From Sminthopsis crassicaudata (taxonomy: Eukaryota): a DNA stretch of 64,000 bases. The notes beneath the pieces are model-generated. The model made no database searches, was not told the origin of the DNA, and worked only from the letters and a program-made list of their open reading frames with translations. This document shows, one piece after another, positions 50-49,718 of the stretch. Numbering within the stretch: position 1 is the stretch's first letter; each line of letters opens with the position of its first letter. The translations under genes were made by a program, and so were the position numbers. The DNA lies in NCBI RefSeq assembly GCF_048593235.1, contig NC_133619.1, positions 649,738,558 through 649,802,557 of the forward strand, written 5' to 3'.

Positions 50-3000
50 TACCGGGAGCGGGATTCCTTGGAGGCTGTGTTCACCTTCTGGGCGGCCTCC
101 GAGGCTGAGGCCTCTTTCCCACTGAGCCGCCTGTGGGACACTCGACTCAGAGGTTACTTGGGCTCCCGCTACGATGCCCGAATCGGGGTCAGCGACTGGG
201 ACTTGCATATGAAGCTGCATGACCGAGGGGTGAGCCACCTGGACTTGAGTTCCTTGGGAAGCTTGTGGGAGAGAAAACTACCATTTCCAGCGGGCTGCAG
301 GGAGTATTGTTGAAAGGCCCCCCTATGCTTCTCCCAAATGATGTTGGGAAATGGAGTTTTAGGCACCTCTGCATGGGAGCATCTGGCAGATGAAGGGTAA
401 AGATTAGGAGATTGATCACCTGAAGAGAAGGTTCGGAGGATTGCTGGGTCCTTGAGCTCCTCTGTCTCTCAGGCCCGGGTCATCAACAGCCGAGAGTTTC
501 GTCGCTGGCGGGAGACCAGTGTGGCCTTCGAGATTCGGGATGCTTCGGCCTATCAGCTCCCAAATCGGACTCTAGCGTCAGGACGCCTGATGAGCCATGT
601 GCGTGCTTTAGGCTCCCTGCCCATCTCTTGGCTCTGGGGGATGCAGACTTCTCTCCCAAGGGGTCCCACTCGCCGTTGTCCCTTTCTAGCCTTTGATAAC
701 CCAGTAATGGACCCTACTCACCACCTCAGGGGACTGTGGGAGTCTAACCTTAACCCAGTCTACCACCTCACCGGAAATTGGAAAGTTGTGGCTTCTGGGC
801 ACTTAGGACTTCTCGGGAATCCTGGTCTGCCCAGTCCCTCAGTCCTGTATTTCAGGAGATGTGGGACTTCAGGTTCCCAGCCCTTTGTCCCCAGGGTCCC
901 AGCAGCCCCCCTTCCAAGCTTCTGACATTTGAGGGTTTGAGTGTCCTTTTCTCAGTCTCCTGGGGGACCCAGATTTCCACAAATTGATCCATGTCTCTCC
1001 CCCAACCTCAGCGAGGGGAGCGTGTGGCTGTGCGAGGCTACTGGGGGGACGTGGCTACCGGGCCTTTCGTGGCCTTTGGCATCGAGTCTGACGATGAGAG
1101 TGTCTTGAAGAGCCGCAACGGAACCCCTGTTAAGGTGCCCAGGGAGCCCCATCTCTGACCTTCTCCCCTCCACCTCCCGGCCTTCTCCTTTTCTCTTGCT
1201 CTTTCCCGGGCCTTGACCTGGGCAGACCTAAGGTCTCCCTGACTCCCCATCTCTTTGGCCGCGATTGGCTCTCCCCCGCAGTTTCCATCTCTCGCCCTCA
1301 GCGTCTCTGGCTTTCCTCCTTTCGCTTTGACTTGGGGTTGTGTCTGGGCCTCGGGTTGTCTGGTCCAAGTATCTCTTCAGTTTCCTCCGGAAGACTCCAG
1401 GTCCCATTTCCATTTATAACGCGCTACTCCCGAAGTCTGCCCCTTCTCGGCCTCTCCCCACCTCCCTCCAACTGCTCCACTCCACAGCTCCGCCCATTTC
1501 TCCAGGCTCCGCCCACATGTCCTGCTCGTCCCTCCCACAGTGCGCGGGTGAGATCTCCCTGCACAACGTGACCTCGCTGTTTCGAAGCCTAGTGGCTGCG
1601 GAGGAGGTGGTGTCTGGGGCCGAAGCTGAAACCGAGGCCGAGGCCGGGGCCCCAGAGTCTGGTGAGAGGGGCAGGAGGCTCCAAAACTTTCCTCCTCCTC
1701 AGAACCAGTCGCTCTTTTAGTCTCCTTAACTCTGAGTCTTCCCTCCCCTCTCTCCCACTCAGGGCTCTTTAAAACCATCTGGATTCCCAGAGGGGAAACT
1801 GAGGCCAATAGGAGGGGGATAGGAGTCCTCCCAAGGACTAGGGGCAGGGAAAGGGAAAGTTCCTCACCTGAGGGAAGGGCCCGGAGGCCCCTGTGCTTGT
1901 GTGTGTAACAGCCAGGGCAGGAAAGGCCGCCCCTGGCCAGTCCTCTGACTCCTCTTCCTGGCACTGGGTGCCCCCCTCTCTTTCCCCGTCTTCTTCACCT
2001 TCAGACCCGGCGGGCTCCAGACCTTTCCGGGTGCATTTCCTGCCCCTGGGGGCCGCCCCGACCCTGCACCAACGAAAGCGCTACAGCAGCCGCTTCCACC
2101 TTCTCTACGTGTCCTGCGGGTAACTGAGGGCTCGTTCCCCCGCGCCCCTGGCCCAGGTCACCTCAGGGGTCCCCAAGTTTCTCCCCCACTGAAGCTGACT
2201 CTTTTCCTTGGTCCCAGGCGTCCTGAACCGTGAGCCCCTTTCCCCTCCCTCTACCAGAAGGAATCTTGATCCCTCAAACCTCACTCCAGTTCTCCCTCGG
2301 ACCCAGGCGTCCTGCCTCATCCAGGCCTCTCCTCCTTAGACTCGGGAATTTTGAGCCCCCAGTTTTCTGTTCAGGGACTCAGGAGTAAACCAACCCCTTC
2401 CTCTCCGGGATTGCGTCATCCCGATTTCCAACCCCTCCGACAGAGACTCAGGAGCAGATCCCCAGCCCTCTTCTCCAGGAAAGGGGGGCACCTTGATTGT
2501 TTCAGTCCCTCCTCCCTCAGGGACAAAAGGACACGCACTGATTCCCCACCGCCCCGTCCTCCCGCGGGACCTAAGAGCTCTGCCCTTTCCTTCCCGGGAC
2601 CCCAGGAGTCCCGGCTCCCCAGACCTCTCCCCCAGTGACCTAAGCCCTGGTGTTCCGCCCTTCATGCCCCAGGGATCCCGAACTAAAATGCGCCTCGAGG
2701 AATCTGGGAACACGTTGTCCAGCTCTCTGATCCTGGGCTCTTCCTCTCTGCAGGATGGTCCATCAGCTGAGCCCGGAGCTCGGGGCCTGCGTGGCTCCCG
2801 GGGGACGCTTGGTTGTGGAACTGGCCAGGTGAGCGCTGTCCGCGCGGCCTGGGTGCTGAAGGTGCGGGCCCCGCTCGGGAGCCCTGACCTTCCCATCTGT
2901 CCTTAGGTACCTTGTGGATCTGCGCCCTAACCAGCTAGAGAGTTTCTGTGATCGCGTCCGAGAGCTGGCTGAAGCTGCTGGCTTCGCACCGGAGTCCCAC

Positions 3001-4035
3001 GAGGGTCCCCCCGAAACCTTCGCGCGCTTCTCTCGGAAGCCCCAGCCAGAAGGGGAGGCCCCGAGTGTTGGTCAGAAGACCAAAGCCCCGCCCCTTGAGA
3101 AGACTAATACCGATATTTTAACCCCGCCCCCTGATGCCCCAGAACCCGCCCCCTCTGAAATTCAGAGCCCATCCTCCCAGGCTGATGCTCCTGGAACACT
3201 GACCCCGCCTCCTAGGGTCTCTGAGCCCGCCCCCTCCGAAATTCAGAGCCCATCCCCCCAGGTTGATGCTCCTGGAGCGCTGACCACACCTCCCAGGGCT
3301 TCTGAGCCCGCCCCTTCTGAAATTCAGGGCCCATCCTCCCAGGCGGATGCTCCTGGAACACTGACCCCGCCTCCTAGGGTCTCTGAGCCCGCCCCCTCCG
3401 AAATTCAGAGCCCATCCCCCCAGGTTGATGCTCCTGGAGCGCTGACCACACCTCCCAGGGCTTCTGAGCCCGCCCCTTCTGAAATTCAGGGCCCATCCTC
3501 CCAGGCTGATGCTCCTGGAGCGCTGATCCCGCCTCCCAGGGCCTCTGAGCCCGCCCCCTCTGAAATTCAGAGCCCATCCTCCAGTGCCGAAGCTCCTGGA
3601 GCACTGACCCCGCCTCCCAGGGCTTCTGAGCCCGCCCCTTCTGAAATTCAGGGCCCATCCTCCCAGGCGGATGCTCCTGGACCGCTGACCCCGCCTCCTA
3701 GAGCTTCTGAACCTGCCTCCTTTGAAATTCAGAGCCCATCCTCCAGTGCCGAAGCTCCTGGAGCACTGACCCCGCCTCCCAGGGCTTCTGAGCCCGCCCC
3801 CTCTGAAATTCAGAGCCCATCCTCCAGTGCCGAAGCTCCTGGAGCACTGACCCCGCCTCCCAGGGCTTCTGAGCCCGCCCCCTCTGAAATTCAGAGCCCA
3901 TCCTCCAGTGCCGAAGCTCCTGGAGCACTGACCCCGCCTCCCAGGGCTTCTGAGCCCGCCCCCTCTGAAATTCAGAGCCCATCCTCCAGTGCCGAAGCTC
4001 CTGGAGCACTGACCCCCGCCTCCCAGGGCTTCTGA
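50..4035 (+). CDS. DNAAF3: Dynein axonemal assembly factor 3, 3' part (5' exons lie left of the window). Exons 50-229, 473-598, 1012-1134, 1541-1661, 2005-2119, 2754-2828, 2907-4035 (to 4525 if the extra C at 4013-4017 is removed)
   Basis: All exons have AG/GT boundaries with consistent phases. Translation ([19 protein letters not shown]; [25 protein letters not shown]; FRVHFLPL; [20 protein letters not shown]) matches DNAAF3 as recalled. It lies directly upstream of TNNI3, as in human. Confidence 0.93.
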
Positions 4036-4210
4036 GCCCGCCCCCTCTGAAATTCAGAGCCCATCCTCCAGTGCCGAAGCTCCTGGAGCACTGACCCCGC
4101 CTCCCAGGGCTTCTGAGCCCGCCCCCTCTGAAATTCAGAGCCCATCCTCCAGTGCCGAAGCTCCTGGAACACTGACCCCGCCTCCCAGGGCCTCTGAGCC
4201 GGCTCCCTAT
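3120..4210 (+). repeat. Coding minisatellite, 81-bp unit (27 aa, [27 protein letters not shown]), about 13 copies, in the DNAAF3 last exon
   Basis: Direct 81-bp periodicity visible in both DNA and translation. Confidence 0.95.
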
Positions 4211-4702
4211 GGCATTCTTGGACCAGCCACCAGCCCAGAAGTAGCGGGCATGCGGGGCCCTCCCCTTGGCCATGTGCCTCGCCCCTCAAAGGCTCGGAGC
4301 CTGCCTCCAGATGCGGAGCCAGGGCCTTCTGGAATTTTGGCTCCGCCCCCTGGGCACTCCGCCCCCGCCCTCCCGGGCGTTCCGGGACCTGCCAAGGGTC
4401 CTGATGATCTTGGAATGTCCTCTGGGGAATCCGGTGCCCCTTCTAACCCAACACTGACCCCACCTTCGGCATTTCCGAACCCTTCCCCCGACGACTCTGG
4501 CTCCAGATCGCGAGGCTCAGACTAAGCCGCCGAATTCTAGAGGGGACCCCTTGGTCCCCGAATTCTCCAGTTTCTCCTAGGCCCCTGCCCCTTCCCCTCC
4601 ACCCCACGGCTATTTTGGCCCCAGGATTCTTTCTCATCGCGTCCCCCTGGATTTCTGGGGCTCGTAGTTCCCTGTCCGTCCCAGGGAGTCAGAACTTGTT
4701 GG

Positions 4703-4708
4703 AATAAA
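4703..4708 (+). terminator. Polyadenylation signal of DNAAF3
   Basis: AATAAA about 180 nt after the 4525 stop codon. Confidence 0.7.
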
Positions 4709-4966
4709 GAATCGGACCCCATCAACTGTCTGTTATCTGGGAGAGAGCAGCACATCGCCACCGCCTTAAGGACAGGGGTGTCGGGACTCCTGGGTCCCCA
4801 AGAACAATGGCTCAGGGGCTCAGGATGCCTTGCTTCCAGAGGGCGGAGAGTCTAGGTCCCATGTCCGGGTCTTTGAAAGGAATGTGCTAGAGAGCCAGCC
4901 CAGTTTAGGAGACTTGAATAGGTGGGGGTTCAAGGGACCTCGGTTCTGGAGAATCAAAACGGGGAG

Positions 4967-5286
4967 TCCCCAAGGGAGAAAGGGCTGGGGACTAGGAGAG
5001 GGTCCCCAAGGGAGAAAGGGCTGGGGACTAGGAGAGGGCGCCCAAGGGAGAAAGGGCTGGGGACTAGGAGAGGGTCCCCAAGGGAGAAAGGGCTGGGGAC
5101 TAGGAGAGGGTCCCCAAGGGAGAAAGGGCTGGGGACTAGGAGAGGGCGCCCAAGGGAGAAAGGGCTGGGGACTAGGAGAGGGTCCCCAAGGGAGAAAGGG
5201 CTGGGGACTAGGAGAGGGTCCCCAAGGGAGAAAGGGCTGGGGACTAGGAGAGGGTCCCCAAGGGAGAAAGGGCTGGGGACTAGGAG
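4967..5286. repeat. 36-bp G-rich minisatellite, about 9 copies, between DNAAF3 and the TNNI3 promoter
   Basis: Unit CCCCAAGGGAGAAAGGGCTGGGGACTAGGAGAGGGT repeated in tandem. Confidence 0.95.
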
Positions 5287-5623: not shown

Positions 5624-9460
<3,837 letters not shown>

Positions 9461-14444: not shown

Positions 14445-17400
14445 ATGTCAGACACCGAGGAGCAAGATTATGAGGAGTAAGTATTGGGGGGGGAAAGGAT
14501 GGGGAATGGGTGCAGTAAATATTGTGGGGGGAAGGATGGGGAATGGGTGCAGTAAATATTGGGGGGGAGGATGGGGAAAGGCTGCACCTTGATGTCTGAA
14601 TCTAACTTCTTCCTCTCTCCTGCCCCAATCCGTAGGGAACAGCAGGAAGGTGAGTCGAGGGCCTTGGGATGGAGGGAAAGGAAGATCGGACTCCTGGGTC
14701 CTGAAGGTGTGGGCGCTGGGGTTCGGACCCCCGGGTCCCGTACTCTGAACTTGAGAAGGCCAAGGAAGGCGGCCCAGGTGCCCGAGGACTTCACACGGAG
14801 GAGAGGAGGCGGCCGGCTTTAACTCTTTCAGCACCACGGCGCTGTCCACCGCCCCCTCCCAAAGACAACCCTTTTTTTTTTCTTTTTTCTCCCTCTAACC
14901 TGTGGGTTCCCTGACCTCAGAGGAGGAGGCCGCCGAGGAGGAAGGTGAGTTCACGGGGACGGTGACGGAGGGGTGCTTGGCTCTCTGAATTTGGGGGGGG
15001 GGGCTGGAAGCTGGATTCTTACTGCTGCGTGACCGCTAAGACTGAAGGGAGCTTAGAGATCCTTGGGGCCAAGACTGCCCAGTGTACCCCTGGGGCTGGG
15101 AGGGGGGTGACAGCCCAGAGAGGGCAAGGGGGCTGCCAGTGCATTCAGTGGGGGGGGGGGAACTCTCCACCTGGCGCCAGATTCTGCCCTTTAACAGCCT
15201 CTCCTCTTTCTCCCCTCCCCCTGCACTGCTGGCGGGACCCCCTCCCCAATTCCTCGCTTCTCCCTCCCCCCCCACCCCAGCCCCCGAGGAGTCGGAGCCG
15301 GTCGCAGAGCGAGGTACGGTGGTCGCTTCGCTTCCGTCTCCGGGAACCGGGCAGGGGGGAAATCCCATCCAGGCCGCGGCCCCTTCACTCCATCCCTGGG
15401 TATTCTCTAAGCAATACCCAGCCCCCTTTGAGGGGCCGCACCCACTCCTTTCCCACACCTGCCTTCTTTCCTTGATATACATTCAAAGGTTTGGGGTTCG
15501 GAGGGAGGGGAGCTAAGAAAGCTGGGGGTCGGGAGCTCCTAGATGCCTGAATTTGGCAGGTGGCCCCGGTGGAAACTGGGAGATCCCTAATGGGGCACCT
15601 GGGTCCCTGAGGGGGTGGGGGAAGGAGTGCCACAGAGGGCAGGTCCAACGGGCCCTTGAGGAGGGGTTTGCTGAGTGAGGGGATATCAGGGTCCCTGAGT
15701 GGGAAGGGACTGGGAAAAGGGAAACAGGGATCCCTGGAGGATGGGGAACACTCCCCAACAAATTGTGAATGTATATGGTCGCTGTGTGATCCCAGCTCTG
15801 CACCCCCTACCCATTTTACCCCCCTCCCTGAGGGCAAGAGGAATCGGTACCCAGACCCTTCCCAATCCTCCTGAGACCTAGGATCAAGGGAGGTATTAGT
15901 CTCCCAACCCATTTTTTCTTCTCTAATTATCTCTCTCTGTCTTCAACTCCCTCCTTACAGAAGAGGAGCGACCCAAACCCAGGTGAGTGTCTGTCCTAAC
16001 GGTGGACTGCGTCCAGAGGGCAATCCTGAATCACAGGGAACGTGACTAATCCTCTCCCATTTCACAGATGGGGGTGGGGGGCTCAGAAAGAGAGAAACAC
16101 TTTTTGCTCAAGGTCACACAAGCTTTNNNNNNNNNNNNNNNNNNNNNNNNNNNNNNNNNNNNNNNNNNNNNNNNNNNNNNNNNNNNNNNNNNNNNNNNNN
16201 NNNNNNNNNNNNNNNNNNNNNNNNNNNNNNNNNNNNNNNNNNNNNNNNNNNNNNNNNNNNNNNNNNNNNNNNNNNNNNNNNNNNNNNNNNNNNNNNNNNN
16301 NNNNNNNNNNNNNNNNNNNNNNNNNNNNNNNNNNNNNNNNNNNNNNNNNNNNNNNNNNNNNNNNNNNNNNNNNNNNNNNNNNNNNNNNNNNNNNNNNNNN
16401 NNNNNNNNNNNNNNNNNNNNNNNNNNNNNNNNNNNNNNNNNNNNNNNNNNNNNNNNNNNNNNNNNNNNNNNNNNNNNNNNNNNNNNNNNNNNNNNNNNNN
16501 NNNNNNNNNNNNNNNNNNNNNNNNNNNNNNNNNNNNNNNNNNNNNNNNNNNNNNNNNNNNNNNNNNNNNNNNNNNNNNNNNNNNNNNNNNNNNNNNNNNN
16601 NNNNNNNNNNNNNNNNNNNNNNNNNNNNNNNNNNNNNNNNNNNNNNNNNNNNNNNNNNNNNNNNNNNNNNNNNNNNNNNNNNNNNNNNNNNNNNNNNNNN
16701 NNNNNNNNNNNNNNNNNNNNNNNNNNNNNNNNNNNNNNNNNNNNNNNNNNNNNNNNNNNNNNNNNNNNNNNNNNNNNNNNNNNNNNNNNNNNNNNNNNNN
16801 NNNNNNNNNNNNNNNNNNNNNNNNNNNNNNNNNNNNNNNNNNNNNNNNNNNNNNNNNNNNNNNNNNNNNNNNNNNNNNNNNNNNNNNNNNNNNNNNNNNN
16901 NNNNNNNNNNNNNNNNNNNNNNNNNNNNNNNNNNNNNNNNNNNNNNNNNNNNNNNNNNNNNNNNNNNNNNNNNNNNNNNNNNNNNNNNNNNNNNNNNNNN
17001 NNNNNNNNNNNNNNNNNNNNNNNNNNNNNNNNNNNNNNNNNNTATTGACTTGTCCGGTTGATTATAGAATTAGAAAAAGTTCCAAGAGATTGAGGAAGAT
17101 CACACTAACCAGGGCTTCTGATTTCCTTACTTTCTGACTTTTCCCAGAAGTTATTTAGTGTACCTAGGGTCAGATTGGAACTCAGGGCCTTCTGATTCCT
17201 CTAAGATCAGTGCTCTATCCACGGCACCATCTAGCTGCCCTCACGCAGGAAGTCTTGACCAAAGTGGTACAGGAAGGGAGCTTAGGAAATGTTTGCTTAG
17301 TCTTTGCTTTGTAGATAGAAGGAAAACGAGACTCACCAGGAATGGGGACTTGGTCAAGCCTATGAGGTGCAATCCACCATTTAGTGCTTCCCCAAATGGT

Positions 17401-20400
17401 CTCAAGGGAACATGTGAAGTGGTGCTCAGGGCTCACCCTCCCGAAGACACATTCCTGCAGCCTTTTGGAAGATTCAGTTTGATCTCTTATTAGTCCAAGA
17501 TTTGGGGGAAGAGAGAAGAGGGAACAAAGGAGACCCTCGCCCTGATTGTGAGGTCTTCACTAGCCCTTCCTCTGTTTCCCTGCCCTGCCCAGCAGGCCCG
17601 TGGTGCCTCCACTGATCCCACCAAAGATCCCTGAGGGAGAGAGAGTCGATTTCGATGTGAGTGGAGGGAGTAGACGGCACTGGGGGCGTTCTGTGTGCCT
17701 GGCTGGAGCTTCTGGCTTTAAGTTTGTGCCACTGAGTCTTGCCTGCTTGCTGGCTGGTGGGAGGGGTCTCCAGCAGGTGCTGATCTGCACCAGCCCATTC
17801 ACTCATAGGGCTGCCTCCTAAAGCCCTAAACCGAGAACTGGGAAGTGCGGCCCCGAGCCTGGTCCCCGAAGCCCACCTGACATGGCACGTTCGAAATCTC
17901 CATGTGGCTGCTGGGCTGGAGCAGGGAAGTTGGGAGCTAGTGCTAAAAGTCCTGCCTTAATGATCTCTGAAACAAGTTCCCCATGCCCCAAATGTCACTC
18001 CTAGGACATCCACCGAAAACGCATGGAGAAGGACCTGCTGGAGCTGCAGACCCTGATCGACGTTCACTTTGAGCAGAGGAAGAAGGAGGAGGAGGAGCTC
18101 GTGGGGCTGAAGGACAGGATTGTGAGTGTTGGGGAGCCAAGGCATCCCCCTCTCCCAACCATGGGACCCTGACATGGGCCTCAGGGCAAGCTCCTCCAAG
18201 GCCATGGGTTTCCTTGAGCAGATCCCCCAGGCAATCTCCCAGGGCTGTGATGCTTGTAGGGAATCTTGTGTTTGAGAAACCACAAGGTCACAGATGGAGA
18301 TCTCATAGCCCTTGGGACCGCACTCTTCCATTTTTTTTTTTCTTGAGGCTGGGGTTATGTGACTTGCCCAGGGTCACACAGCTAGGAAGTGTTAAGTGTC
18401 TGAGATCACATTTGAACTCAGGTCCTCCTGAATTCAAGGCTGGTGCTCTATCCACTGCACCACCTAGTTGTCCCTGCACCTTTCCATTTTACACTTGAGG
18501 AAACTGAGACCCAGCCAGGTAGCTGGAGCTTCTAAAGCCCAACGAATGCATTTCCTTACTTTGGAGGCACCTGGTGGCTTAGACCAGAGATTCTTAAACT
18601 TTCCCCGGGCCAAGAAATGATAGCTGCACAGATCCAACATGTAGTAATAATAAATCCCCAAGAAACGTTAGAACACTTCTTTGGTACACGCATTTTGCCA
18701 TTTATTAAAGATGAAGGCACATTTGCAGACCAATGATGGGACAGAGGTTCTTGTTTACTTTTATATAAAGAAATCTTGGCGGGATATTTAGTACCTTTTA
18801 TTGTTGTCCATTTTTCCACAATCTCCACATCCAGTTACAGGCCCTCTTATGGCATCTCCACCTACAGTTCAAGCAGCTTTGGCTTAGACACTTACTGGCT
18901 ATATGACCCTGGGCAAGTCACTTCACTAATGCTGCCTCAGTTTTCTCATCTCTAAAATGGGAATGATAATAGCACCTCCCTGTGGGGTTGTTTTGTCAGG
19001 ATTCAATGAGATAATAGTTGTGAAGGTTCTTTGCAAACCTACTCTAGACACATTGCTGGGATGTTATCAGGAGGAGGGGACTTGAGACCCCAAGAGATTA
19101 AGGAAGGGCCATTCCTCAGATCACAAGAACCAGGGCTTCTGATCTCCTTACTTTCCCAGGAGTTCCCAGTGCCACAGGGAGGTGGGTGCAGGGGAGGATG
19201 GGGGACAATCCTCTCCTCTCACTCGCCTCTCCCTCCAGGAACGCCGGAGAGCAGAGCGAGCGGAGCAGCAGCGCGTCCGGACAGAGAAGGAGAGGGAGCG
19301 ACAAGCCAAGCTGGCGGTGGGCCCCCCTTCCCTTCTCTGCCAACCACACAGCCTTCCAGGCCTTCTTGTTTTCTGCTGGCTCCGGTCCCCCCTGAGCCCA
19401 GGCTCCTCATCTCCAAAGGGAGATGCTCTGTAAGGCTCCTTCCTGCTGGAGCCTTGCTCAAGGCCTAACTTTACCCAGGGAAAAAGTTACTTAAGCAGCC
19501 TGCTTGCAGGCTCAGGCCCCTGGGCCTCTCTGGGCCCCATGAGCCTCTCTGGGCCCCTGGGCCTCTCTGGGTCCTGTGGGCCTCTCTGGGCCCCATGAGC
19601 CTCTCTGGGCCCCTGGGCCTTCTGGGCCCCCGTGGGCCAATCTAGGTCCCATGGGCCTCTCTGCCCCCCACATGGGCCTCTCGGGGCCCCCGTGGGCCAA
19701 TCTAGGTCCCATGGGCCTCTCTGGGCCCCCATGAGCCTCTCTGGGCCCCATGGGCCTCTCTGGGCCCCATGAGCCTCTCTGGGCCCCCATGAGCCTCTCT
19801 GGGACCCCATGAGCCTCTCTGGGTCCTGTGGGCCTCTCTGGGCTCCCATGAGCCTCTCTGGGCCCCCATGAGCCTCTCTGGGCTCCCATGAGCCTCTCTA
19901 GGCCCCGTGGGCCTCTCTGGGCCCCATGAGCCTCTCTGGGCCCCATGAGCCTCTCTGGGCCCCATGAGCCTCTCTGGGCCCCCATGAGCCTCTCTGGGCC
20001 CTTGGGCCTCTCTGGGTCCTGTGGGCCTCTCTGCCCCCCCATGGGCCTCTCTGGGTCCTGTGGGCCTCTCTGGGCCCCCATGAGCCTCTCTGGGTCCTGT
20101 GGGCCTCTCTGGGCCCCCATGAGCCTCTCTGGGCCCCTGGGCCTCTCTGGGTCCTGTGGGCCTCTCTGGGCTCCCATGAGCCTCTCTGGGTCGGCTACTT
20201 CATGAATGTCTGAGAGAGAGAGAAGGGGCTCCCCGGGTCAGGCCCTGAGGACACCACTCCAGAATCTCTCCACAGCTGCTCCCAGGGAGTTACCCCTAGC
20301 CTGGAGGGGGGGTGGGGGAGGGCAAGCGGCAAAGCCCCGCCCACACGGGCCTTTAGAGACAGCTCCCACCCCCAGCCCGTCGCATCCAGGAGCTGGTCCC

Positions 20401-23400
20401 ATCTTTTCTACATCCTTCCTCTCCCGCCCCCCCCCCCCCCCAGGAGGAAAAGATGAGGAAGGAGGAGGAAGAGGCGAAGAAAAGGGCTGAAGATGACGCC
20501 AAAAAGAAGAAGGTCCTGTCCAATATGGGCGCCCACTTTGGGGGCTACCTGGTCAAGGTAATGTTGGCTGGGCCTCTGGGGGGGCTCGCGGTGGGGGATG
20601 GGGCTGGGGGCTTCACCAGGCCTCCCTCCCCGCAGGCAGAGCAAAAGCGGGGGAAACGCCAGACGGGAAGAGAGATGAAGCAGAGAATTCTGTCGGAGCG
20701 GAAGAAACCCTTGAACATCGATCATATGGGGGAGGAGCAGCTCAGGTGGGAGCACAAGTGCAGGGGGAGGAGGGAGGGAAAAAATGGGGGGGAGGAGAAC
20801 AGCCGATAGACGCTCGCGGAGGGCCAGAGGGGACTGCGCACGCACCGAAGTCCGAAGACAGAAGCAGGATGAAGAGGGGCTGGGAGAAGCTTGGAGAAAT
20901 TTATGAGGGGACAAAAGGAGGCTTGGAGCAGAGCCCGAGGGGCGGGAGGTGGGATCCGCCACCTGCAGCTCTGGGGAGGAAAGGCGAAGAATAAAAGGGG
21001 AGCGGGAGACGGCTTTCCCGCAGGCAGAGGCGGCGCGCGGCCAGCAGGGGGCTGCTTTCCCGCAGGCAGAGGCGGCGCGCGGCCAGCAGGGGGCGGCTTT
21101 CCCGCAGGCAGAGGCGGCGCGCGGCCAGCAGGGGGCGGCTTTCCCGCAGGCAGAGGCGGCGCGCGGCCAGCAGGGGGCACCACCGCCACGCAGCCCCCGA
21201 GACGGAGCTGGTCTCGGGCCTCGGCGGGCGCCGGCTGGAGACGGACTCGGAGCCAAGGAGAGCCCCGTTCTTCCTGGAGGCCCCGGGGGCTGAGGAGGGG
21301 CTGGCGCGGGCGCATCTCCGTGGAAGAGCCGGGGCAGGCGGGGGGGAGGGGGGGTCAGGGCGTGAGGGAGCGGGACAGAGCGGGGCAGGCGAGTCCGCAG
21401 AGCGGACGGAAGCAGGGACGGGCGCTGCGCGGGCCCGCGGGGCCCATGGTCTCCCTCCCGCCCCTGTCCCGCAGGGAGAAGGCCCGGGAGCTGTCCGACT
21501 GGATTCACCAGCTGGAGTCCGAGAAATTTGACCTGACCGAGAAACTAAAGCAGCAGAAGTATGAGGTGAGGGGGGCGGGGCGGGGGGGGGGCCTGAGGGA
21601 GGGGGGGAGGGAGGCCATCACCCCTTCCTCTGAACCTTCCTTCTCCGCCCCCAGATCAACGTTCTCTACAACCGAATCAGCCACGCCCAGAAATTGTAAG
21701 TGGGTCTCACCCCCTGCCCCCCTTCCAACACCCGCATCCCTCAGCTCTCCTGCCGTTTCTCTCCCCGCGTCTCTGCCCCCTCTAGGGGGCGCTCCTGGGC
21801 TTCTCCCTTTGTGTCTGTAGCTCCGTGTCTGTCTTTCCCCGTCCTCTTCCTCAACCCCCAGCTTCTTTTTAAGGTGATCGGGATTTCCGGACTCAGTACT
21901 AAAAGGATGGTAAATGGAGCAGTAGAAAAAGAGACTGCGGTCTCAGAGAACCCCGGGGGCTCATTTCCCTTTTTGACCCGACTAGGGCCGGCAGATCGCA
22001 GCAGTGTCTGGGCCTCGGGCACCGGGCGGAGAGCGGTGCCTCCGGGGCTGGGGGAGGGGCCGGATTCAGAGGGGCTCCTGTGGGGGAACCCTGGGAAGCC
22101 GAGCTTCCTCCGCCTCCGCGGGATGACCTTTACCGTCCCGGGATAAAGGGCGTGATGGCGCCCTCGGGGCCGCCTAGTGGAGCCGCCGAGAGTGACCAGG
22201 CCCGGGTCGGGGCGAGTCTGACAGGAGGGAAGTCTGGGGAAGGCCCGGCTTACACCCTGGGCCGTGGGGTCTCGGGCTCCCAGACGCCAGGCTGGAAGGA
22301 GCCACTGAGGACACTAGAGGACCGTCCCCAGAGGGGGAAGTGACTGGCTTGAGGCCACACGGGCGGCCCTCAGGGACTTAGTGTGGCCGGTGCATGGCCA
22401 TGGTCAGCCATGGAGACGGTGGCGCCCACGTGGCCTTTGGGCCTTGGGCGGCTCCCAGGGCCCGAGCTGCTCCCCAGCATCGCGGCCCAGGCCGCTAGCC
22501 AGAGCTCTTGGGTCCCGTACAAGTGATGATGCAGTGAGGGGGACCGTCTGGGTTCCCACGCCCTCAGGCTGGGCGCCAGCTTATTCCACCAAGTAAATGA
22601 GGGGGCTCTGCTGGCTGGGAGCCGGGGAACGCCCCCTCCGAGGAGCTGGAGGGAAGACCGCCCCAGGACCGTAGAGAAGTGGCAGTGGGTGGCAGTGGGC
22701 CGCAGCCCAGGGCTTGAGCACCAAGGTTGGTGGGAAGGATAACACCGTAGAGACGGCTGTGGGAGGAGAAAGTGGCCTGGTGCTGAGGGGAGCAAGGGCT
22801 GGTCATGAGGCCTGCTGGTACCCAAGGCCCCTGGGGGACTGGACACAAGCCCTGCTGGTACCCAAGGCCCCTGGGGGGCTGGACACAAGCCCTGCTGGTA
22901 CCCAAGGCCCCTGGGGGACTGGACACACAGTCAGCTCTTTCCAAGCCCCTGGGGGACTGGACACATGGTCAGCTCTTTCCCAAGCCCCTGGGGGACTGGA
23001 CACATGGTCAGCTCTTTCCCAAGCCCCTGGGGGACTGGACACACGGTCAGCTCTTTCCCAAGCCCCTGGGGAACTGGATACATGGTCAGCTCTTTCCCAA
23101 GCCCCTGGGGGACTGGACACATGGTCAGCTCTTTCCCAAGCCCCTGGGGGACTGGACACACAGTCAGCTCTTTCCCAAGCCCCTGGGGAACTGGATACAT
23201 GGTCAGCTCTTTCCCAAGCCCCTGGAGGACTGGACACATGGTCAGCTCTTTCCCAAGCCCCTGGGGGACTGGACACATGGTCAGCTCTTTCCCAAGCCCC
23301 TGGGGGACTGGACACACGGTCAGCTCTTTCCCAAGCCCCTGGGGGACTGGACACACGGTCAGCTCTTTCCCAAGCCCCTGGGGGACTGGACACACGGTCT

Positions 23401-26114
23401 GCTCTTTCCCAAGCCCCTGGGGAACTGGACACACGGTCAGCTCTTTCCCAAGCCCCTGGGGAACTGGACACATGGTCAGCTCTTTCCCAAGCCCCTGGGG
23501 GACTGGACACACGGTCAGCTCTTTCCCAAGCCCCTGGGGGACTGGACACACGGTCAGCTCTTTCCCAAGCCCCTAGGGGACTGGACACAAGGCCTACTGG
23601 TACCCAAGCCCCTGGGGGACTGGACACACGGTCAGCTCTTTCCCAAGCCCCTGGGGGACTGGACACACGGTCTGCTCTTTCCCAAGCCCCTGGGGGACTG
23701 GACACACGGTCAGCTCTTTCCCAAGCCCCTGGGGGACTGGATACATGGTCAGCTCTTTCCCAAGCCCCTGGAGGACTGGACACATGGTCAGCTCTTTCCC
23801 AAGCCCCTGGGGGACTGGACACACGGTCAGCTCTTTCCCAAGCCCCTGGGGGACTGGATACATGGTCAGCTCTTTCCCAAGCCCCTGGGGGACTGGACAC
23901 ATGGTCTGCTCTTTCCCAAGCCCCTGGGGGACTGGACACACGGTCAGCTCTTTCCCAAGCCCCTGGGGGACTGGACACACGGTCTGCTCTTTCCCAAGGC
24001 CCCTGGGGAACTGGACACACGGTCAGCTCTTTCCCAAGCCCCTAGGGGACTGGACACAAGGCCTGCTGGTACCCAAGCCCCTGGGGGACTGGACACACGG
24101 TCAGCTCTTTCCCAAGCCCCTGGGGGACTGGACACACGGTCAGCTCTTTCCCAAGCCCCTGGGGACTGGACACAAGGCCTGCTCTTTCCCAAGCCCCTGG
24201 GGGACTGGACACACGGTCTGCTCTTTCCCAAGCCCCTGGGGAACTGGATACATGGTCAGCTCTTTCCCAAGCCCCTGGGGGACTGGACACACGGTCAGCT
24301 CTTTCCCAAGCCCCTGGGGGACTGGACACACGGTCAGCTCTTTCCCAAGCCCCTGGGGGACTGGATACATGGTCAGCTCTTTCCCAAGCCCCTGGGGGAC
24401 TGGACACAAGGCCTGCTGGTACCCAAGGCCCCTGGGGACTGGACACACAGTCTGCTCTTTCCCAAGGCCCCTGGGGGACTGGACACACGGTCTGCTCTTT
24501 CCCAAGGCCCCTGGGGAACTGGACACACGGTCTGCTCTTTCCCAAGGCCCCTGGGGGACTGGATACATGGCCTACTCTTTCCCAAGGCCCCTGGGGGACT
24601 GGACATACAGTCGGCTCTTTCCCAAAGCCCCTGGGGGACTGGACACAAGGCCTGCTGGTACCCAAGGCCCCTGGGGGACTGGATACATGGCCTACTCTTT
24701 CCCAAAGCCCCTGGGGGGCTGGACACAAGGCCTGCTGGTACTCAAGGCCTCTGGAGGACTGGACATATAGTCTGCTCTTTCCCAAGCCCCCTGGGGCCTG
24801 GATACATGGCTTACTCTTTCCCAAGGCCCCTGGGGGACTGGACACAAGGCCTGCTCTTTCCCAAGGCCCCTGGGGGACTGGACATACAGTCGGCTCTTTC
24901 CCAAAGCCCCTGGGGGACTGGACACAAGGCCTGCTGGTACCCAAGGCCCCTGGGGGACTGGACACAAGGCCTGCTCTTTCCCAAGGCCCCTGGGGGACTG
25001 GACACACAGCCTACTCTTTCCCAAGGCCCCTGGGGGATTGGACACACAGCTTGCTGGTGGTACCCAAGGAGGGTAGGGCATAGAGGGTGGGTAGGGTTCC
25101 ATATGCATCCTCTGTGAGGAAGTGTAGGAGGCTGTGAAATCACTCATTTGCTGCAGTATTTAAATCAATAATTGATGCTTGGGGTAAAAAAAATTAAAAC
25201 TCTTGCAAATACATTTTAGGGAACACATGGATAGATAATCCATCTGAGAAAGATCTGAGGGTGTTAGTGGGCCACAAGTTCAGCATGAGGTAACGGAATA
25301 GTATGGAGGACAAAAAGGAAATTCAATAGGGACATATTAAGAGAAGCAGGGAAAGTGCTATAACTCTAGCTGCATGAGAAAAGTGTCCTGGCCAGAAGGG
25401 GGCCAAGAGCATCGGACTCAAGCCTCTCTTGGATGGCCTGCTAAGTTCTGGGTAGTGAGGGCTAGCATAGATACAGGTTGGGGGCAGCTGACTCCCTGTC
25501 TCCCCCCACTTGTCTGTCACCCCTCCTTCTGTCTGGGTCTTCCCCCCTTTTTCTCTCTCCATTGTTCTCTCCTCCCCTCTGTTTCTCTCCCTCTCTCTCT
25601 CTCTCCCCCACCATCAACCTGTCTCTGTCTGTGTTTCTGTCTCAGGCTGAGCATGTCTTCTCAGTATCCCCCAGCATCTTGTCATCCTAAATGTGTCTCC
25701 CTAAGACTCAGTCTCCCCATCTGTTTCTCCCTGGATCTGTTGGGCTCTGTATCCTCCACACTTCAATTTGTCCTTTCCCCTCTCTCCTTTCCTTCCTCCC
25801 CAACTCATGCCATACACCAGCTTAGATTCTCACTTCTAACCCTTCCAAGTCCACTGACCATGACAGTGATGAGAAACAGCCCCCCAAGACATGGCACACC
25901 AAAGGGACGGCTCATGTTGATCCAATAAACCCCACAAATAGCTGGCCGTCCTCGAGCCCCATGGACAGCAACTCTGTGGTTGGGAGCCTGTGCTTGCAGA
26001 GCTGGGAGGTGGGCTTCCTGGGACCCCATCCAGCCCTGGGGCTGACTCCCGTCTGTCTCCCTGAGCAGTAGGAAGGGGGCCGGCAAGGGTCGTGTTGGCG
26101 GACGCTGGAAGTGA
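14445..26114 (+). CDS. TNNT1: Slow skeletal troponin T, 261 aa including alternative exon 5. Exons 14445-14476, 14636-14649, 14921-14944, 15281-15313, 15961-15982, 17593-17656, 18005-18121, 19239-19316, 20444-20557, 20636-20745, 21475-21565, 21655-21695, 26069-26114
   Basis: [86 protein letters not shown]. The 786 nt join in frame and all introns are GT-AG. Confidence 0.97.
14477..14587. repeat. Three 37-38-bp tandem copies beginning at the TNNT1 exon 2 donor
   Basis: GTAAGTATTGG.. at 14477, GTAAATATTG.. at 14515 and 14552. Confidence 0.8.
16127..17042. other. Assembly gap (916 N) in TNNT1 intron 6
   Basis: Run of N. The flanking exons join in frame, so no constitutive coding exon appears to be missing. 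Confidence 0.99.
17165..17240 (-). mobile_element. Partial marsupial tRNA-derived SINE (WSINE1/MAR1-like), 5' half
   Basis: GTGCTCTATCCACGGCACCATCTAGCTGCCC is the reverse complement of the SINE head. Confidence 0.65.
18331..18474 (-). mobile_element. Full-length marsupial SINE (WSINE1-like)
   Basis: Reverse complement reads GGGACAACTAGGTGGTGCAGTGGATAGAGCACCAGCC..GAGGACCTGAGTTCAAAT..TGACCCTGGGCAAGTCAC..poly(A), with A and B boxes. Confidence 0.85.
18885..19035 (+). mobile_element. MIR-like SINE
   Basis: TGACCCTGGGCAAGTCACTT..GCCTCAGTTTTCTCATCTCTAAAATGGGAATGATAATAGCACC core. Confidence 0.7.
19511..20190. repeat. 19-20-bp variable minisatellite, TNNT1 intron 9
   Basis: GGGCCCCCATGAGCCTCTCT-type units with variants. 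Confidence 0.93.
21011..21178. repeat. 42-bp CpG-rich tandem repeat, 4 copies, TNNT1 intron 11
   Basis: CTTTCCCGCAGG recurs at 21013, 21055, 21097 and 21139. Confidence 0.93.
22805..25050. repeat. 39-bp minisatellite, about 55-58 copies, TNNT1 intron 13
   Basis: Unit GGACTGGACACACGGTCAGCTCTTTCCCAAGCCCCTGGG with interspersed GCTGGTACCCAAGG variants. Confidence 0.97.
25200..25400 (+). mobile_element. Old CR1/L3-like LINE fragment
   Basis: GAGAAAGATCTGAGGGTGTTAGTGGGCCACAAGTTCAGCATGAG resembles CR1/L3 ORF2 remnants. Recognised by eye only. Confidence 0.45.
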
Positions 26115-46200: not shown

Positions 46201-48830
46201 CCAAGGAGATGCCCCCCCAGAGCTGGAGCAGGGCCGGCTCCCCTCATGCCCGTCTCCTTCCCTTCTGTTTTCTCCCCTCCTTTGCCCCCCCCCCCCATTT
46301 CCTGAGCCCTTTTTTCTGTCTCTGGTTTCCCTCAGATACTACCAGCACTCCCAGCTAGTTCCTGGGGGCTCTGACTGCTCAGGGGGACCCCCTCCCAACC
46401 CCCCACCGGGCTCAGGGGAAGCTCACAGCTCCCCCTTCCCAGCCCTTCCCCCGCTCACCCCGACCCGGAGGCCCTGGAAGTAGTGGACGTCGGGCTGGGG
46501 CCGCTCGGGCTCCTGGCACACCAGGAGGAGCAGTGAGTGGGTCTGGCCCGGGGGAAGCACGGTCTCGCATCGAAGGATGGAGGGCAAGGCATAGGACTCC
46601 AGCTCCTCCTGTGGGAGGGTGTAGAGGCTGGCAAGATAGCCAGGGGCCCTCCCTCCCCACTGCTTCCCCTCTGACCCCAGAGGCAGAACCCTCCCCATGC
46701 CATTCCCTCTGACCCCAGAGGCAGATCCCCTCCCCATGCCATTCCCTCTGACCCCAGAGGCAGATCCCCTCCCCATGCCATTCCCTCTGACCCCAGAGGC
46801 AGAACCCTCCCCATGCCATTCCCTCTGACCCCAGAGGCAGATCCCTCCCCATGCCATTCCCTCTGACCCCAGAGGCAGAACCCTCCCCATGCCATTCCCT
46901 CTGACCCCAGAGGCAGATCCCCTCCCCATGCCATTCCCTCTGACCCCAGAGGCAGATCCCCTCCCCATGCCATTCCCTCTGACCCCAGAGGCAGAACCCT
47001 CCCCATGCCATTCCCTCTGACCCCAGAGGCAGATCCCTCCCCATGCCATTCCCTCTGACCCCAGAGGCAGAACCCTCCCCATGCCATTCCCTCTGACCCC
47101 AGAGGCAGATCCCCTCCCCATGCCATTCCCTCTGACCCCAGAGGCAGATCCCCTCCCCATGCCATTCCCTCTGACCCCAGAGGCAGAACCCTCCCCATGC
47201 CATTCCCTCTGACCCCAGAGGCAGATCCCCTCCCCACTGCTTCCCCTCTGACCCCAGAGGCAGAACCCTCCCCATGCCATTCCCTCTGACCCCAGAGGCA
47301 GAACCCTCCCCATGCCATTCCCTCTGACCCCAGAGGCAGATCCCCTCCCCACTGCTTCCCCTCTGACCCCAGAGGCAGAACCCTCCCCATGCCATTCCCT
47401 CTGACCCCAGAGGCAGATCCCCTCCCCACTGCTTCCCCTCTGACCCCAGAGGCAGAACCCTCCCCATGCCATTCCCTCTGACCCCAGAGGCAGAACCCTC
47501 CCCATGCCATTCCCTCTGACCCCAGAGGCAGATCCCCTCCCCACTGCTTCCCCTCTGACCCCAGAGGCAGAACCCTCCCCATGCCATTCCCTCTGACCCC
47601 AGAGGCAGAACCCTCCCCATGCCATTCCCTCTGACCCCAGAGGCAGATCCCCTCCCCACTGCTTCCCCTCTGACCCCAGAGGCAGAACCCTCCCCATGCC
47701 ATTCCCTCTGACCCCAGAGGCAGATCCCCTCCCCACTGCTTCCCCTCTGACCCCAGAGGCAGAACCCTCCCCATGCCATTCCCTCTGACCCCAGAGGCAG
47801 AACCCTCCCCATGCCATTCCCTCTGACCCCAGAGGCAGATCCCCCTTCCCACTGAGTCCCCTCTGACCCCATGGGCAGACCCCCCAACCTCCCCCTCTGC
47901 TTCTCCACAGGAAGAAGCCGGGGCCAGGGGGCTGGGAGGGTGACCCTGGGGTTCAGGCCCGCCTCCTGACCTTGGAGTCCACGTCCAGCAGCTTCACGTG
48001 GCCGGCGGACACCTGGAGCAGCATCTCCTGGGCCCAAATGCGCCCCTGGGCGTCCATGGCCGAGAGCTTCCTGGAGGCGTCCTCCACGGTGTGGACCCCA
48101 TCCTCCTCCCCCAAGCAGAAGGTCACCAGGTGCTGGGGGAGGGGCAAGGCAGGTCAGCCCCGGGCTCCCCAGGCTCCCCCACTTCCCCGCCCCCCAGGCT
48201 CCCAAGACTCACGTTGACGGCGTACTGGGACACATCTGCCATGACCACGGTTGAGTACCTCTTCCTTTGCTCTGGGACCAGAGAGGGAAGCTGAGGGACA
48301 GCTGCTCCCGCCCCCGCCTGCCCCCCCAAGTTCAGCACCCTCAGAATCGTCCTGCTCTGCCAGCCAGGAACCTCCTTCACCAGGAAGGGACCTGAGGAGC
48401 CTCCGCTTGGAGGGAGAAGGCACTGAGGGCTACCCCACCCCCACCCATCTTATAGACAAGGAAACTGAGGCCCAAAGCAAAAGTGGAGTCCATCCCGGTC
48501 CTGAGGCTGCCGCGCAGGGCCTTCCACCTCCAGAGCTCCTCCCTCGGTCCCAGCGGATCCTGTCCGGCCGGGCTGGGGGAGTTTCTGGGCAGTTCCTTTA
48601 CAGCCAAGACAGGCCCCGGCCCCCAACCCTGCCTGCCCCCCCCAGGCGGCCCCTGACTCACCATAGATGGACTTGGCGCTGGGCTTGGGGGCTGCCGTGG
48701 GCCTGGTGGAGGGTCGGAGAGTCACTGGGTGAAGCAGGTCAGACCCACCCCCCCCACTGAGGGGCAGAGCCAAGGGGAAGAAGGGATAGGCGGGGGCGGG
48801 GGGACACACTCACCCTGCGGGGCTGCTCAT
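40217..48830 (-). CDS. EPS8L1: EPS8-like protein 1, about 727 aa, 20 coding exons in transcript order: 48830-48814, 48702-48662, 48271-48213, 48132-47971, 46608-46459, 46136-46054, 45977-45736 (alternative donor at 45823), 45641-45589, 45505-45379, 44249-44161, 44067-43993, 43911-43763, 43637-43496, 43362-43334, 42466-42322, 41502-41374, 41255-41162, 40927-40750, 40531-40399, 40303-40217
   Basis: GCCACCATG start. [36 protein letters not shown]; PTB domain ([19 protein letters not shown]); SH3 domain ([33 protein letters not shown]); SAM-like C-terminus ([20 protein letters not shown]). All phases are consistent. One donor is GC. Confidence 0.94.
44460..44815. repeat. AGAC-rich compound tandem repeat in an EPS8L1 intron
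   Basis: CAGACAGACCCAGAAGCAGAGACATGGA units with variable (CAGA)n. Confidence 0.9.
46665..47870. repeat. 38/39-bp minisatellite, about 31 copies, in the EPS8L1 intron between the PTB exons
   Basis: Unit GCCATTCCCTCTGACCCCAGAGGCAGAACCCTCCCCAT with variants. Confidence 0.96.
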
Positions 48831-49097: not shown

Positions 49098-49718
49098 GGA
49101 CCGGGATGCCTGGGTGCTCAGGGAGGAGGGCGCTGGGGGACCGGGATGCCTGGGTCCTCGGGGAGGAGGGCGCTGGGGGACCGGGATGCCTGGGTCCTCG
49201 GGGAGGAGGGCGCTGGGGGACCGGGATGCCTGGGTGCTCAGGGAGGAGGGCGCTGGGGGACCGGGATGCCTGGGTCCTCGGGGAGGAGGGCGCTGGGGGA
49301 CCGGGATGCCTGGGTCCTCGGGGAGGAGGGCGCTGGGGGACCGGGATGCCTGGGTCCTCGGGGAGGAGGGCGCTGGGGGACCGGGATGCCTGGGTCCTCG
49401 GGGAGGAGGGCGCTGGGGGACCGGGATGCCTGGGTCCTCGGGGAGGAGGGCGCTGGGGGATCGGGATGCCTGGGTCCTCGGGGAGGAGGGCGCTGGGGGA
49501 CCGGGATGCCTGGGTCCTTGGGGAGGAGGGCGCTGGGGGACCGGGATGCCTGGGTCCTCGGGGAGGAGGGCGCTGGGGGATCGGGATGCCTGGGTCCTCG
49601 GGGAGGAGGGCGCTGGGGGACCGGGATGCCTGGGTCCTCAGGGAGGAGGGCGCTGGGGGACCGGGATGCCTGGGTCCTCGGGGAGGAGGGCGCTGGGGGA
49701 TCGGGATACCTGGGTCCC
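49098..49718. repeat. 40-bp G- and CpG-rich minisatellite, about 15 copies, in the EPS8L1 5' region
   Basis: Unit CCGGGATGCCTGGGTCCTCGGGGAGGAGGGCGCTGGGGGA. Confidence 0.96.

What the first reader, a model, noticed from the sequence alone, without database searches (positions are those of the whole stretch)
3120..4210. 81-bp coding VNTR builds a long Pro/Ser-rich tail on DNAAF3
Seen: the last exon holds about 13 in-frame copies of a 27-aa unit. The first copies alternate as an A/B 162-bp dimer ([15 protein letters not shown] / [15 protein letters not shown]), then the 3' copies are a homogenised C unit ([15 protein letters not shown]), which records successive amplification waves. Recalled: the human last exon encodes only about 130 aa, with a few xL(A/T)QP motifs. 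Inference: a lineage-specific, probably length-polymorphic, disordered tail of 375-538 aa, dense in S/T-P phosphosites and PPPR motifs, on a ciliary dynein assembly factor. It could affect stability, condensate behaviour or sperm and cilia function.
Basis: partly seen in the sequence, partly recalled or inferred. Interest (0 to 1): 0.7.

Follow-up and report, generated by a model that had tools for sequence, protein, structure and literature searches.

The report
DNAAF3 tail built from 81-bp repeats
The last exon of this dasyurid marsupial's cilia-motor assembly gene DNAAF3 holds 13 in-frame copies of an 81-bp unit that are present in mature mRNA and roughly quadruple the protein's floppy tail; related dasyurids carry 16-20 copies, so this is a real but fairly ordinary coding minisatellite.

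Summary
Tandem Repeats Finder gives an 81-bp array of 13.1 copies at 3145-4208. It lies in the terminal exon of DNAAF3, which starts at 2907, in the frame that continues the DUF4471 exons. Unit order is A B A' B A'' C A''' C' C C C C C''; five C units are identical.

An RNA contig joins exons 2113>2748 and 2828>2907 and runs into the array. RNA contigs also cover array pieces and the 3' end.

The array is not specific to this species. The 27-aa unit occurs across marsupials:
- Monodelphis 0, Gracilinanus 1
- wombat and wallaby 2, possum 3, bilby 5
- devil 16
- Antechinus 20, all in frame as 81- or 84-bp units

Units resemble their own species' units, which indicates independent turnover. Two eutherians lack the unit.

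An extra C at 4013-4017 shifts the frame and gives TGA at 4033-4035. The 162 codons downstream stay open in the shifted frame and align without gaps to Antechinus. No contig from four runs carries that extra C. I read it as a probable homopolymer assembly error, about 0.65, but this is unproven.

Length polymorphism is hinted at, not shown. Function is inferred only: a longer disordered tail after the methyltransferase-like domain. This is a new member of a known kind.

The parts
68..2123 (+). Upstream DNAAF3 coding exons inside open stretches 68-313, 452-925, 991-1158 and 1893-2123. The last of these exons ends at 2113. The gene's 5' part lies before the window.
   Evidence: Pfam DUF4471 (PF14740) profile positions 14-70, 65-107, 105-148 and 210-247, in order. 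The RNA contig's loose end matches 2091-2113.
2748..2828 (+). Penultimate coding exon.
   Evidence: DUF4471 positions 249-273. The X7 RNA contig joins 2113>2748 and 2828>2907.
2829..2906 (+). Last intron, 78 nt, GT..AG.
   Evidence: Joint in RNA run X7, with zero X7 depth in the intron bin.
2907..4719 (+). Terminal exon of DNAAF3. The 3' end is approximate.
   Evidence: DUF4471 end, positions 274-302. The RNA contig at 4171-4700 runs 19 nt further and stops, whereas DNA contigs go on to about 4966-4995. AATAAA lies at 4703-4708.
3145..4208 (+). 81-bp coding minisatellite: 13 units of 27 aa, preceded by a partial unit from about 3121.
3145..3792 (+). Units 1-8, with 162-bp higher-order alternation (A B A' B A'' C A''' C').
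   Evidence: Distance matrix and variable sites. 93% identity at offset 162 against 84% at offset 81.
3793..4198 (+). Units 9-13, the homogenised C run. Units 9-12 are identical apart from the extra C.
   Evidence: The C clade has 100/99 support.
4013..4017 (+). Run of five C in unit 11 where the eleven other units that keep this run have four (units 2 and 4 differ there). It shifts the frame by +1.
   Evidence: (spacing 82). No contig from 4 runs lies on 3839-4039.
4033..4035 (+). TGA stop reached in the assembly's frame after the extra C.
4199..4525 (+). Conserved non-repeat C-terminal segment (108 codons plus TAA), open only in the shifted frame.
   Evidence: Aligns without gaps to Antechinus at 81.5% aa identity. 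The other frames have 2-3 stops. The GPDDLGM motif is shared by dasyurids, wombat and Dromiciops, with close variants in possum and wallaby.
4703..4708 (+). AATAAA polyadenylation signal.

Best explanation
This is a transcribed coding minisatellite in the terminal exon of DNAAF3.

Origin (inferred). An ancestral marsupial 27-aa Pro/Ser/Ala-rich unit has 0-3 copies in opossums, Dromiciops and diprotodonts. In dasyurids it was amplified by unequal exchange or replication slippage. This animal has 13 copies: first 162-bp dimers, then a run of identical C units.

Constraints seen. Amplification went on separately in each genus. Selection visibly tolerates only in-frame changes: units are 81 or 84 bp, and differences between units lean towards synonymous.

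Product (inferred). The array adds 351 residues with almost no aromatic or bulky hydrophobic content. This makes a much longer intrinsically disordered tail between the Rossmann/methyltransferase-like globular domain and a short conserved C-terminal segment. If the unseen N-terminal part is about 402 aa, as in devil and Antechinus, the protein would be about 940 aa.

The extra C in unit 11 is most likely a homopolymer error of the assembly, or a private allele. The normal protein then reads through units 12-13 and the conserved end.

Effect (inferred, not shown). The array acts as a flexible spacer and multivalent proline-motif region whose exact length matters little. The expansion would then be mainly mutational drift in a minisatellite-rich GC-rich region.
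For: - Array and frame.
- Gene identity; synteny with TNNI3.
- In mature mRNA: X7 contig with joints 2113>2748 and 2828>2907 running to 3174, no X7 depth in the intron, and array pieces plus 4171-4719 present.
- Copy numbers across marsupials.
- Antechinus has a 738-aa open frame through 20 units, and all anchor spacings are multiples of 3.
- 50 of 54 units have their nearest neighbour in the same species. Species labels need 3 changes on the unit tree against 9.8 in shuffles, 0 of 500 shuffles as low.
- pN/pS between unit types is 0.2-0.66.
- Composition is P 26, S 19, A 16, E 9 %, on the disordered side of the charge-hydropathy line.
- The window holds many other minisatellites.
- For the extra C as an error: the downstream frame is open for 162 codons and aligns without gaps to Antechinus. 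No contig carries the extra C. A published draft of this species' genome was built from noisy long reads with short-read polishing. The devil long-read assembly has several frame-breaking indels in the same array, while an older devil model reads 16 units in frame.
Against: - There is no protein-level evidence that the array is translated.
- The post-array segment has dN/dS 0.67, not significantly below 1 (Fisher p 0.31), so constraint there is weak.
- Logan contigs drop rare variants, so the missing extra-C words do not disprove the extra C.
- X1 shows another extra C behind 3553, so frameshift alleles may really segregate.
- The AlphaFold run failed its internal control: the globular domain also scored pLDDT under 50. 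It gives no real support for disorder.
- I do not know which assembly version the window comes from.
Confidence: 0.8

Rival explanations
1. The extra C at 4013-4017 is real, either as an allele or fixed. This animal's DNAAF3 would then end inside unit 11 (TGA 4033-4035) and lack units 12-13 and the conserved 108-aa end. Because the stop lies in the last exon, a truncated protein would be made rather than the mRNA being degraded.
For: - The extra C is what the assembly says.
- X1, probably the reference animal, shows a different single-C insertion behind 3553 at about half the flank depth, so homopolymer frameshift variants may exist in this array.
- Constraint on the downstream segment is weak: dN/dS 0.67, p 0.31.
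- The NCBI devil model also stops inside the array.
Against: - No contig in two DNA runs, one RNA run and one unclear run covers the extra-C words.
- The downstream 162 codons are open only in the shifted frame and align without gaps to Antechinus.
- The GPDDLGM end motif is kept across marsupial orders.
- Antechinus has no frame-breaking indel in 20 units.
- Other readers noted homopolymer frameshifts in conserved genes of this genome (unchecked).
Confidence: 0.3
2. The expansion is adaptive rather than drift. More units would give more Pro-directed phosphosites and PPPR docking motifs. That would tune DNAAF3 behaviour in dynein assembly particles, with selection through sperm or cilia performance in dasyurids.
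For: - The frame is kept over 13-20 units, and unit differences lean synonymous.
- Large arrays occur in all three dasyurids, and an independent 5-unit array occurs in bilby.
- Dynein assembly factors are reported to sit in liquid-like compartments and to be rich in disordered regions (PMC10835030 text).
Against: - Copy number, unit order and unit sequence differ freely between genera.
- Many non-coding minisatellites surround the gene, which points to a regional mutational tendency.
- There are no functional data.
Confidence: 0.12
3. The array is not part of the protein. It would be an untranslated or spliced-out minisatellite that merely happens to be open.
For: - Two reverse frames of the unit are also open, so openness alone is weak evidence.
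- The NCBI Antechinus model omits 11 of 20 units.
Against: - The spliced RNA contig enters the array in the coding frame with no stop before it.
- No joint skips the array.
- The period is a multiple of 3 in every species.
- The conserved coding end follows in frame in Antechinus.
Confidence: 0.03

Closest known systems
[quoted passage not shown]
   Same: It sits in the same position, directly after the Rossmann/methyltransferase-like globular domain. It is proline-rich and has no known role.
   Different: Here the last exon encodes 538 aa, against about 125 aa in a eutherian (squirrel). Two thirds of it consist of 27-aa tandem units.
Coding minisatellites (VNTRs) in disordered protein regions, for example the human PER3 54-bp, DRD4 48-bp and MUC1 60-bp arrays (from my own knowledge, not tested here)
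   Same: Units are head-to-tail and a multiple of 3 bp, they are translated in frame, units are homogenised within a lineage, and copy number changes between lineages.
   Different: The gene is different and the unit is 81 bp. Copy-number variation between individuals is not yet shown here.
DNAAF3 arrays of other dasyurids: Antechinus flavipes (L002 8442-10089) and Tasmanian devil (L001 11321-12653; P0011)
   Same: They share the same exon, the same 81-bp unit, the same flanks and the same conserved C-terminal end.
   Different: They have 20 and 16 units against 13. Unit variants are species-specific (Antechinus has 84-bp units with an extra Leu). The C-type unit is found only in this window's species.
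Armadillo DNAAF3 tail (P0009, flagged low quality by NCBI)
   Same: The same tail region is expanded by tandem proline-rich motifs, so the region is repeat-prone in other mammals too.
   Different: The motif is about 8 aa (PPPExLxP) and is not the 27-aa unit.

Membership tests
DNAAF3 (C19orf51/PF22) orthologue | DUF4471 (PF14740) domain | tested here: met
   Five exon-bearing stretches plus the start of the last exon match profile positions 14-302 in order. Three matches are above the 25-bit cutoff. The others are short exon pieces below it.
DNAAF3 (C19orf51/PF22) orthologue | DUF4470 (PF14737) N-terminal domain | not testable with these tools
   The window starts inside the gene, so the N-terminal exons lie before position 1. 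The orthologues found all carry it.
DNAAF3 (C19orf51/PF22) orthologue | Best hits are DNAAF3 of related species, and the gene order is conserved | tested here: met
   The top hit is devil DNAAF3 at E 2e-87, followed by other marsupial DNAAF3. The locus is collinear with devil and Antechinus, with the troponin I gene downstream.
Coding minisatellite / VNTR | Head-to-tail units of 10-100 bp, beyond chance | tested here: met
   Period 81, 13.1 copies, score 1652.
Coding minisatellite / VNTR | Unit is a multiple of 3 and in frame with the upstream coding exon | tested here: met
   81 = 27 x 3 and the register offset is 0. The one exception is the extra C in unit 11.
Coding minisatellite / VNTR | Present in mature mRNA | tested here: met
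   A spliced X7 contig runs into unit 1, and X7 contigs lie on units 3-8 and 12-13 and on the 3' end. Contigs cannot show one molecule spanning the whole array.
Coding minisatellite / VNTR | Copy number varies between individuals | tested here: inconclusive
   X1 and X6 hold a unit variant absent from the assembly (3683-3744 continuing with the A-type middle). X6 differs at two places inside the array. Identical units collapse in contigs, so no copy number can be read.
Coding minisatellite / VNTR | Translated into protein | not testable with these tools
   No proteome data are at hand.
Intrinsically disordered region | Low-complexity, low-hydrophobicity composition with no predicted secondary structure | tested here: inconclusive
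   The composition and charge-hydropathy test fall on the disordered side. In the AlphaFold model of Antechinus DNAAF3 no helix or strand is predicted after residue 440. However, the whole model, including the globular control, has pLDDT under 50.

The most novel reading that the evidence does not exclude
The 13-20 PPPR-bearing units could work as a multivalent docking or pseudo-substrate array for the protein's own arginine-methyltransferase-like domain, or for SH3/WW partners in dynein assembly particles. Their number would then be under selection in dasyurids, a group with strong sperm competition. Copy number would tune axonemal dynein pre-assembly.
Probability: 0.07. Interest if true: 0.65.

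Novelty: new member of a known kind. Interest (0 to 1): 0.36.

Why it matters
DNAAF3 is needed for building ciliary and flagellar dynein arms, and nobody knows what its disordered tail does. Marsupials offer a natural series of this tail, from 0 units (Monodelphis) through 5 (bilby) to 13-20 (dasyurids), with the globular domain unchanged. That series could be used to test whether tail length or valency matters for dynein assembly.

There is also a practical point for annotation. The array misleads gene models: the devil model stops inside it, the Antechinus model drops 11 units, and this assembly has a frameshift. Protein lengths for this gene in databases should not be trusted.

Tried and rejected
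- Reads test of the extra C. Only Logan contigs were available. The identical units 9-12 collapse, and no contig lies on 3839-4039 in any of 4 runs, so the test could not decide.
- AlphaFold2 on Antechinus DNAAF3 with an 11-sequence alignment gave mean pLDDT 32.7 throughout, including the globular control. I rejected it as evidence for disorder and did not run a fold search.
- dN/dS on the post-array segment is 0.67 but not significant. I rejected it as proof that the segment is still coding.
- Contig depth ratios of C-unit contigs to flanks (X1 about 3.5-4.7, X6 about 1.3) might suggest copy-number differences. The tool warns that such depths are no copy number, so I did not use them.
- Bilby DNA could not be fetched because the file was too large, so only its protein was compared.
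- King 2023 on disordered regions of dynein assembly factors is not held.
- Literature searches for DNAAF3 with marsupial, tandem repeat, VNTR or minisatellite found nothing relevant.
- Squirrel and Monodelphis already show that not all mammals carry the array.
The two pieces either side of the stop were searched apart.
- The N runs at 16127-17042 and 61609-61890 were left alone.

Full report
**What is in the sequence.**
Tandem Repeats Finder reports an array of period 81, 13.1 copies, 90% matches and score 1652 at 3145-4208. The repeat finder gives start-to-start spacings of 81 nine times and 82 once. I cut the array into 13 units.
- Units 1 and 3 are type A and differ at 3 sites.
- Units 2 and 4 are type B and are identical.
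- Units 5 and 7 are A-like.
- Units 6, 9, 10, 11 and 12 are identical type C. Unit 11 carries one extra C.
- Units 8 and 13 are C variants.

Units 3, 5 and 7 share two private bases, so the 162-bp alternation runs through unit 8 before the pure C run starts. A partial unit precedes the array from about 3121.

**The gene.**
I built no joined spliced model.
- Open stretches at 68-313, 452-925, 991-1158, 1893-2123 and 2755-2832, and the start of the last exon, match Pfam DUF4471 at profile positions 14-70, 65-107, 105-148, 210-247, 249-273 and 274-302, in that order.
- The last-exon translation finds devil DNAAF3 at E 2e-87, followed by other marsupial DNAAF3.
- The locus is collinear with devil and Antechinus, with the troponin I gene downstream.
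- An earlier scan note names the genome as the fat-tailed dunnart. My hits show a dasyurid, which fits, but I did not prove the species.

**Frame.**
The unit register has offset 0 relative to the exon frame. Of the three + frames only this one is open; the other two have one and two stops per unit. Two reverse frames are also open, so openness alone would be weak evidence. What counts is continuity with the DUF4471 exons.

**Transcription.**
All runs offered were Logan contigs. I laid 2700-4700 against four runs.
- Run X7 has a 344-nt contig that skips 2829-2906 (GT..AG) and runs on to 3174, into unit 1.
- Its 23 loose letters before 2748 match 2091-2113, the end of the upstream exon. One contig therefore carries two splice junctions.
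- X7 has no depth in the intron bin.
- X7 contigs lie on 3328-3480, 3550-3743 and 4040-4173.
- Its contig at 4171-4700 runs only 19 nt further, to about 4719. That is just after AATAAA at 4703-4708. DNA contigs continue to the next repeat near 4966.

The array is thus in spliced mRNA and no joint removes it. Contigs cannot prove that one molecule spans all 13 units, and they say nothing about tissue or expression level.

**The frameshift.**
Unit 11 has five C at 4013-4017. The eleven other units that keep this run have four; units 2 and 4 differ at that spot. The assembly frame then stops at TGA 4033-4035, giving 375 aa from 2908. Without the extra base the frame reaches TAA at 4523-4525, giving 538 aa.

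Evidence that the longer reading is the normal one:
- The 162 codons after the shift are open only in the shifted frame; over the post-array part the other frames have 2-3 stops.
- The 108 non-repeat codons align without gaps to Antechinus at 81.5% aa identity.
- The end motif GPDDLGM is shared by dasyurids, wombat and Dromiciops, with close variants in possum and wallaby.
- Antechinus keeps 20 units without one frame-breaking indel.
- No contig in any of the four runs lies on 3839-4039.
- A published draft of this species' genome came from noisy long reads polished with short reads. That kind of polishing fails inside identical repeats.
- The devil long-read assembly has unit spacings of 78, 79, 68 and 73 in the same array, whereas an older devil model reads 16 units in frame.
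- Two unchecked scan notes report homopolymer frameshifts in other conserved genes of this genome.

Evidence against:
- Contigs drop rare variants, so absence proves nothing.
- dN/dS of the downstream segment is 0.67, not significantly below 1 (p 0.31).
- X1, whose flanks equal the window, has a contig with a different extra C behind 3553 at about half the flank depth.

I put the assembly-error reading at about 0.65.

**Comparison across species.**
The 27-aa unit is shared across marsupials.

| Species | Full units | Note |
|---|---|---|
| Monodelphis | 0 | only the degenerate terminal unit |
| Gracilinanus | 1 | |
| Dromiciops | 1-2 | |
| Wombat | 2 | |
| Wallaby | 2 | |
| Possum | 3 | |
| Bilby | 5 | nearly identical units |
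| Devil | 16 | |
| Antechinus | 20 | genome copy; 81 or 84 bp; 738-aa open frame |

A squirrel tail has one EPAPSEVL motif in about 125 aa. An armadillo tail has about a dozen 8-aa PPPExLxP motifs. The array is nonetheless a dasyurid feature and not a feature of this species alone, and this species does not have the largest one.

**Turnover.**
- 50 of 54 units from four species have their nearest neighbour in their own species.
- On a DNA tree of the 33 units from this window and Antechinus, species labels need 3 changes against 9.8 in shuffles (0 of 500 shuffles as low).
- The seven C-type units form a clade with 100/99 support.
- The first units of both species sit near the base of the tree.

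This fits repeated unequal exchange after the genera split.

**Constraint.**
- Differences between unit types give pN/pS of 0.2-0.66 on small counts.
- Length changes in Antechinus are 3-bp steps.
- The pre-array part of the exon has dN/dS 0.36.

Selection clearly keeps the frame and mildly keeps the unit sequence.

**Nature of the product.**
The array is P 26%, S 19%, A 16% and E 9%, with one aromatic residue in 289. It falls on the disordered side of the charge-hydropathy line, while the globular part of Antechinus DNAAF3 falls on the ordered side.

AlphaFold2 on Antechinus DNAAF3 predicted no helix or strand after residue 440. However, the whole model had pLDDT under 50, including the globular control, so I do not count it as evidence.

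**Likely mechanism.**
Shown: a tandem array, in frame, spliced into mRNA, expanded in dasyurids, and turning over by lineage.

Inferred: it is translated into a tail about four times the eutherian length. It acts as a flexible spacer with many S/T-P and PPPR motifs. Its length is largely free to drift.

The window holds many other minisatellites (36-bp, 39-bp, 77-bp, 40-bp and others). This points to a regional mutational tendency rather than a special demand on this gene. An adaptive role is not excluded.

**Polymorphism.**
X1 and X6 share a contig in which the start of unit 8 continues with an A-type middle, a unit absent from the assembly. X6 also differs at two sites inside the array and five in the flanks. 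Alleles with different unit content therefore exist. Copy number could not be read.

**Novelty.**
Searches for DNAAF3 with marsupial, tandem repeat, VNTR or minisatellite found nothing on this array. It is a new member of a well-known kind, the coding minisatellite in a disordered region.

Noticed in passing
L002:8208-10427: The NCBI Antechinus flavipes DNAAF3 model (844 aa) leaves out 567 nt and 327 nt of the array, in register with the repeat. The genome has one open frame through all 20 units, so the true protein may be about 1,140 aa.
   Followed up: partly
L001:11321-12994: In the devil long-read assembly the same array has unit spacings of 78, 79, 68 and 73 bp, and the NCBI model (627 aa) stops inside it. 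An older model (P0011, 1048 aa) reads 16 units and the conserved end in frame.
   Followed up: partly
window 4966-5286: A 36-bp x 8.9 array (97% matches) lies between the DNAAF3 poly(A) signal and the troponin I gene. Alignments to devil and Antechinus break across it, so it looks specific to this species.
   Followed up: partly
window 6231-6544: A 39-bp x 8.1 array downstream of DNAAF3 is shared, with different copy numbers, with devil and Antechinus.
   Followed up: no
window 22821-25047; 46651-47883; 49098-49717; 19515-20190; 59456-60622: The window is unusually rich in large GC-rich minisatellites: 39-bp x 57, 77-bp x 16, 40-bp x 15.5, 19/39-bp x 35, and 58/276-bp arrays. I did not check whether any is coding.
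   Followed up: no
window 3477-3582: DNA run X1, whose flanks are identical to the window, has a contig with an extra C behind 3553 at about half the flank depth. This is either a second possible frameshift variant in the array or a read error.
   Followed up: no
window 3683-3744: Runs X1 and X6 share a contig in which the start of unit 8 continues with the A-type middle instead of the C-type. This unit variant is not in the assembly.
   Followed up: no
window 16127-17042; 61609-61890: Two runs of N (916 and 282 bases).
   Followed up: no
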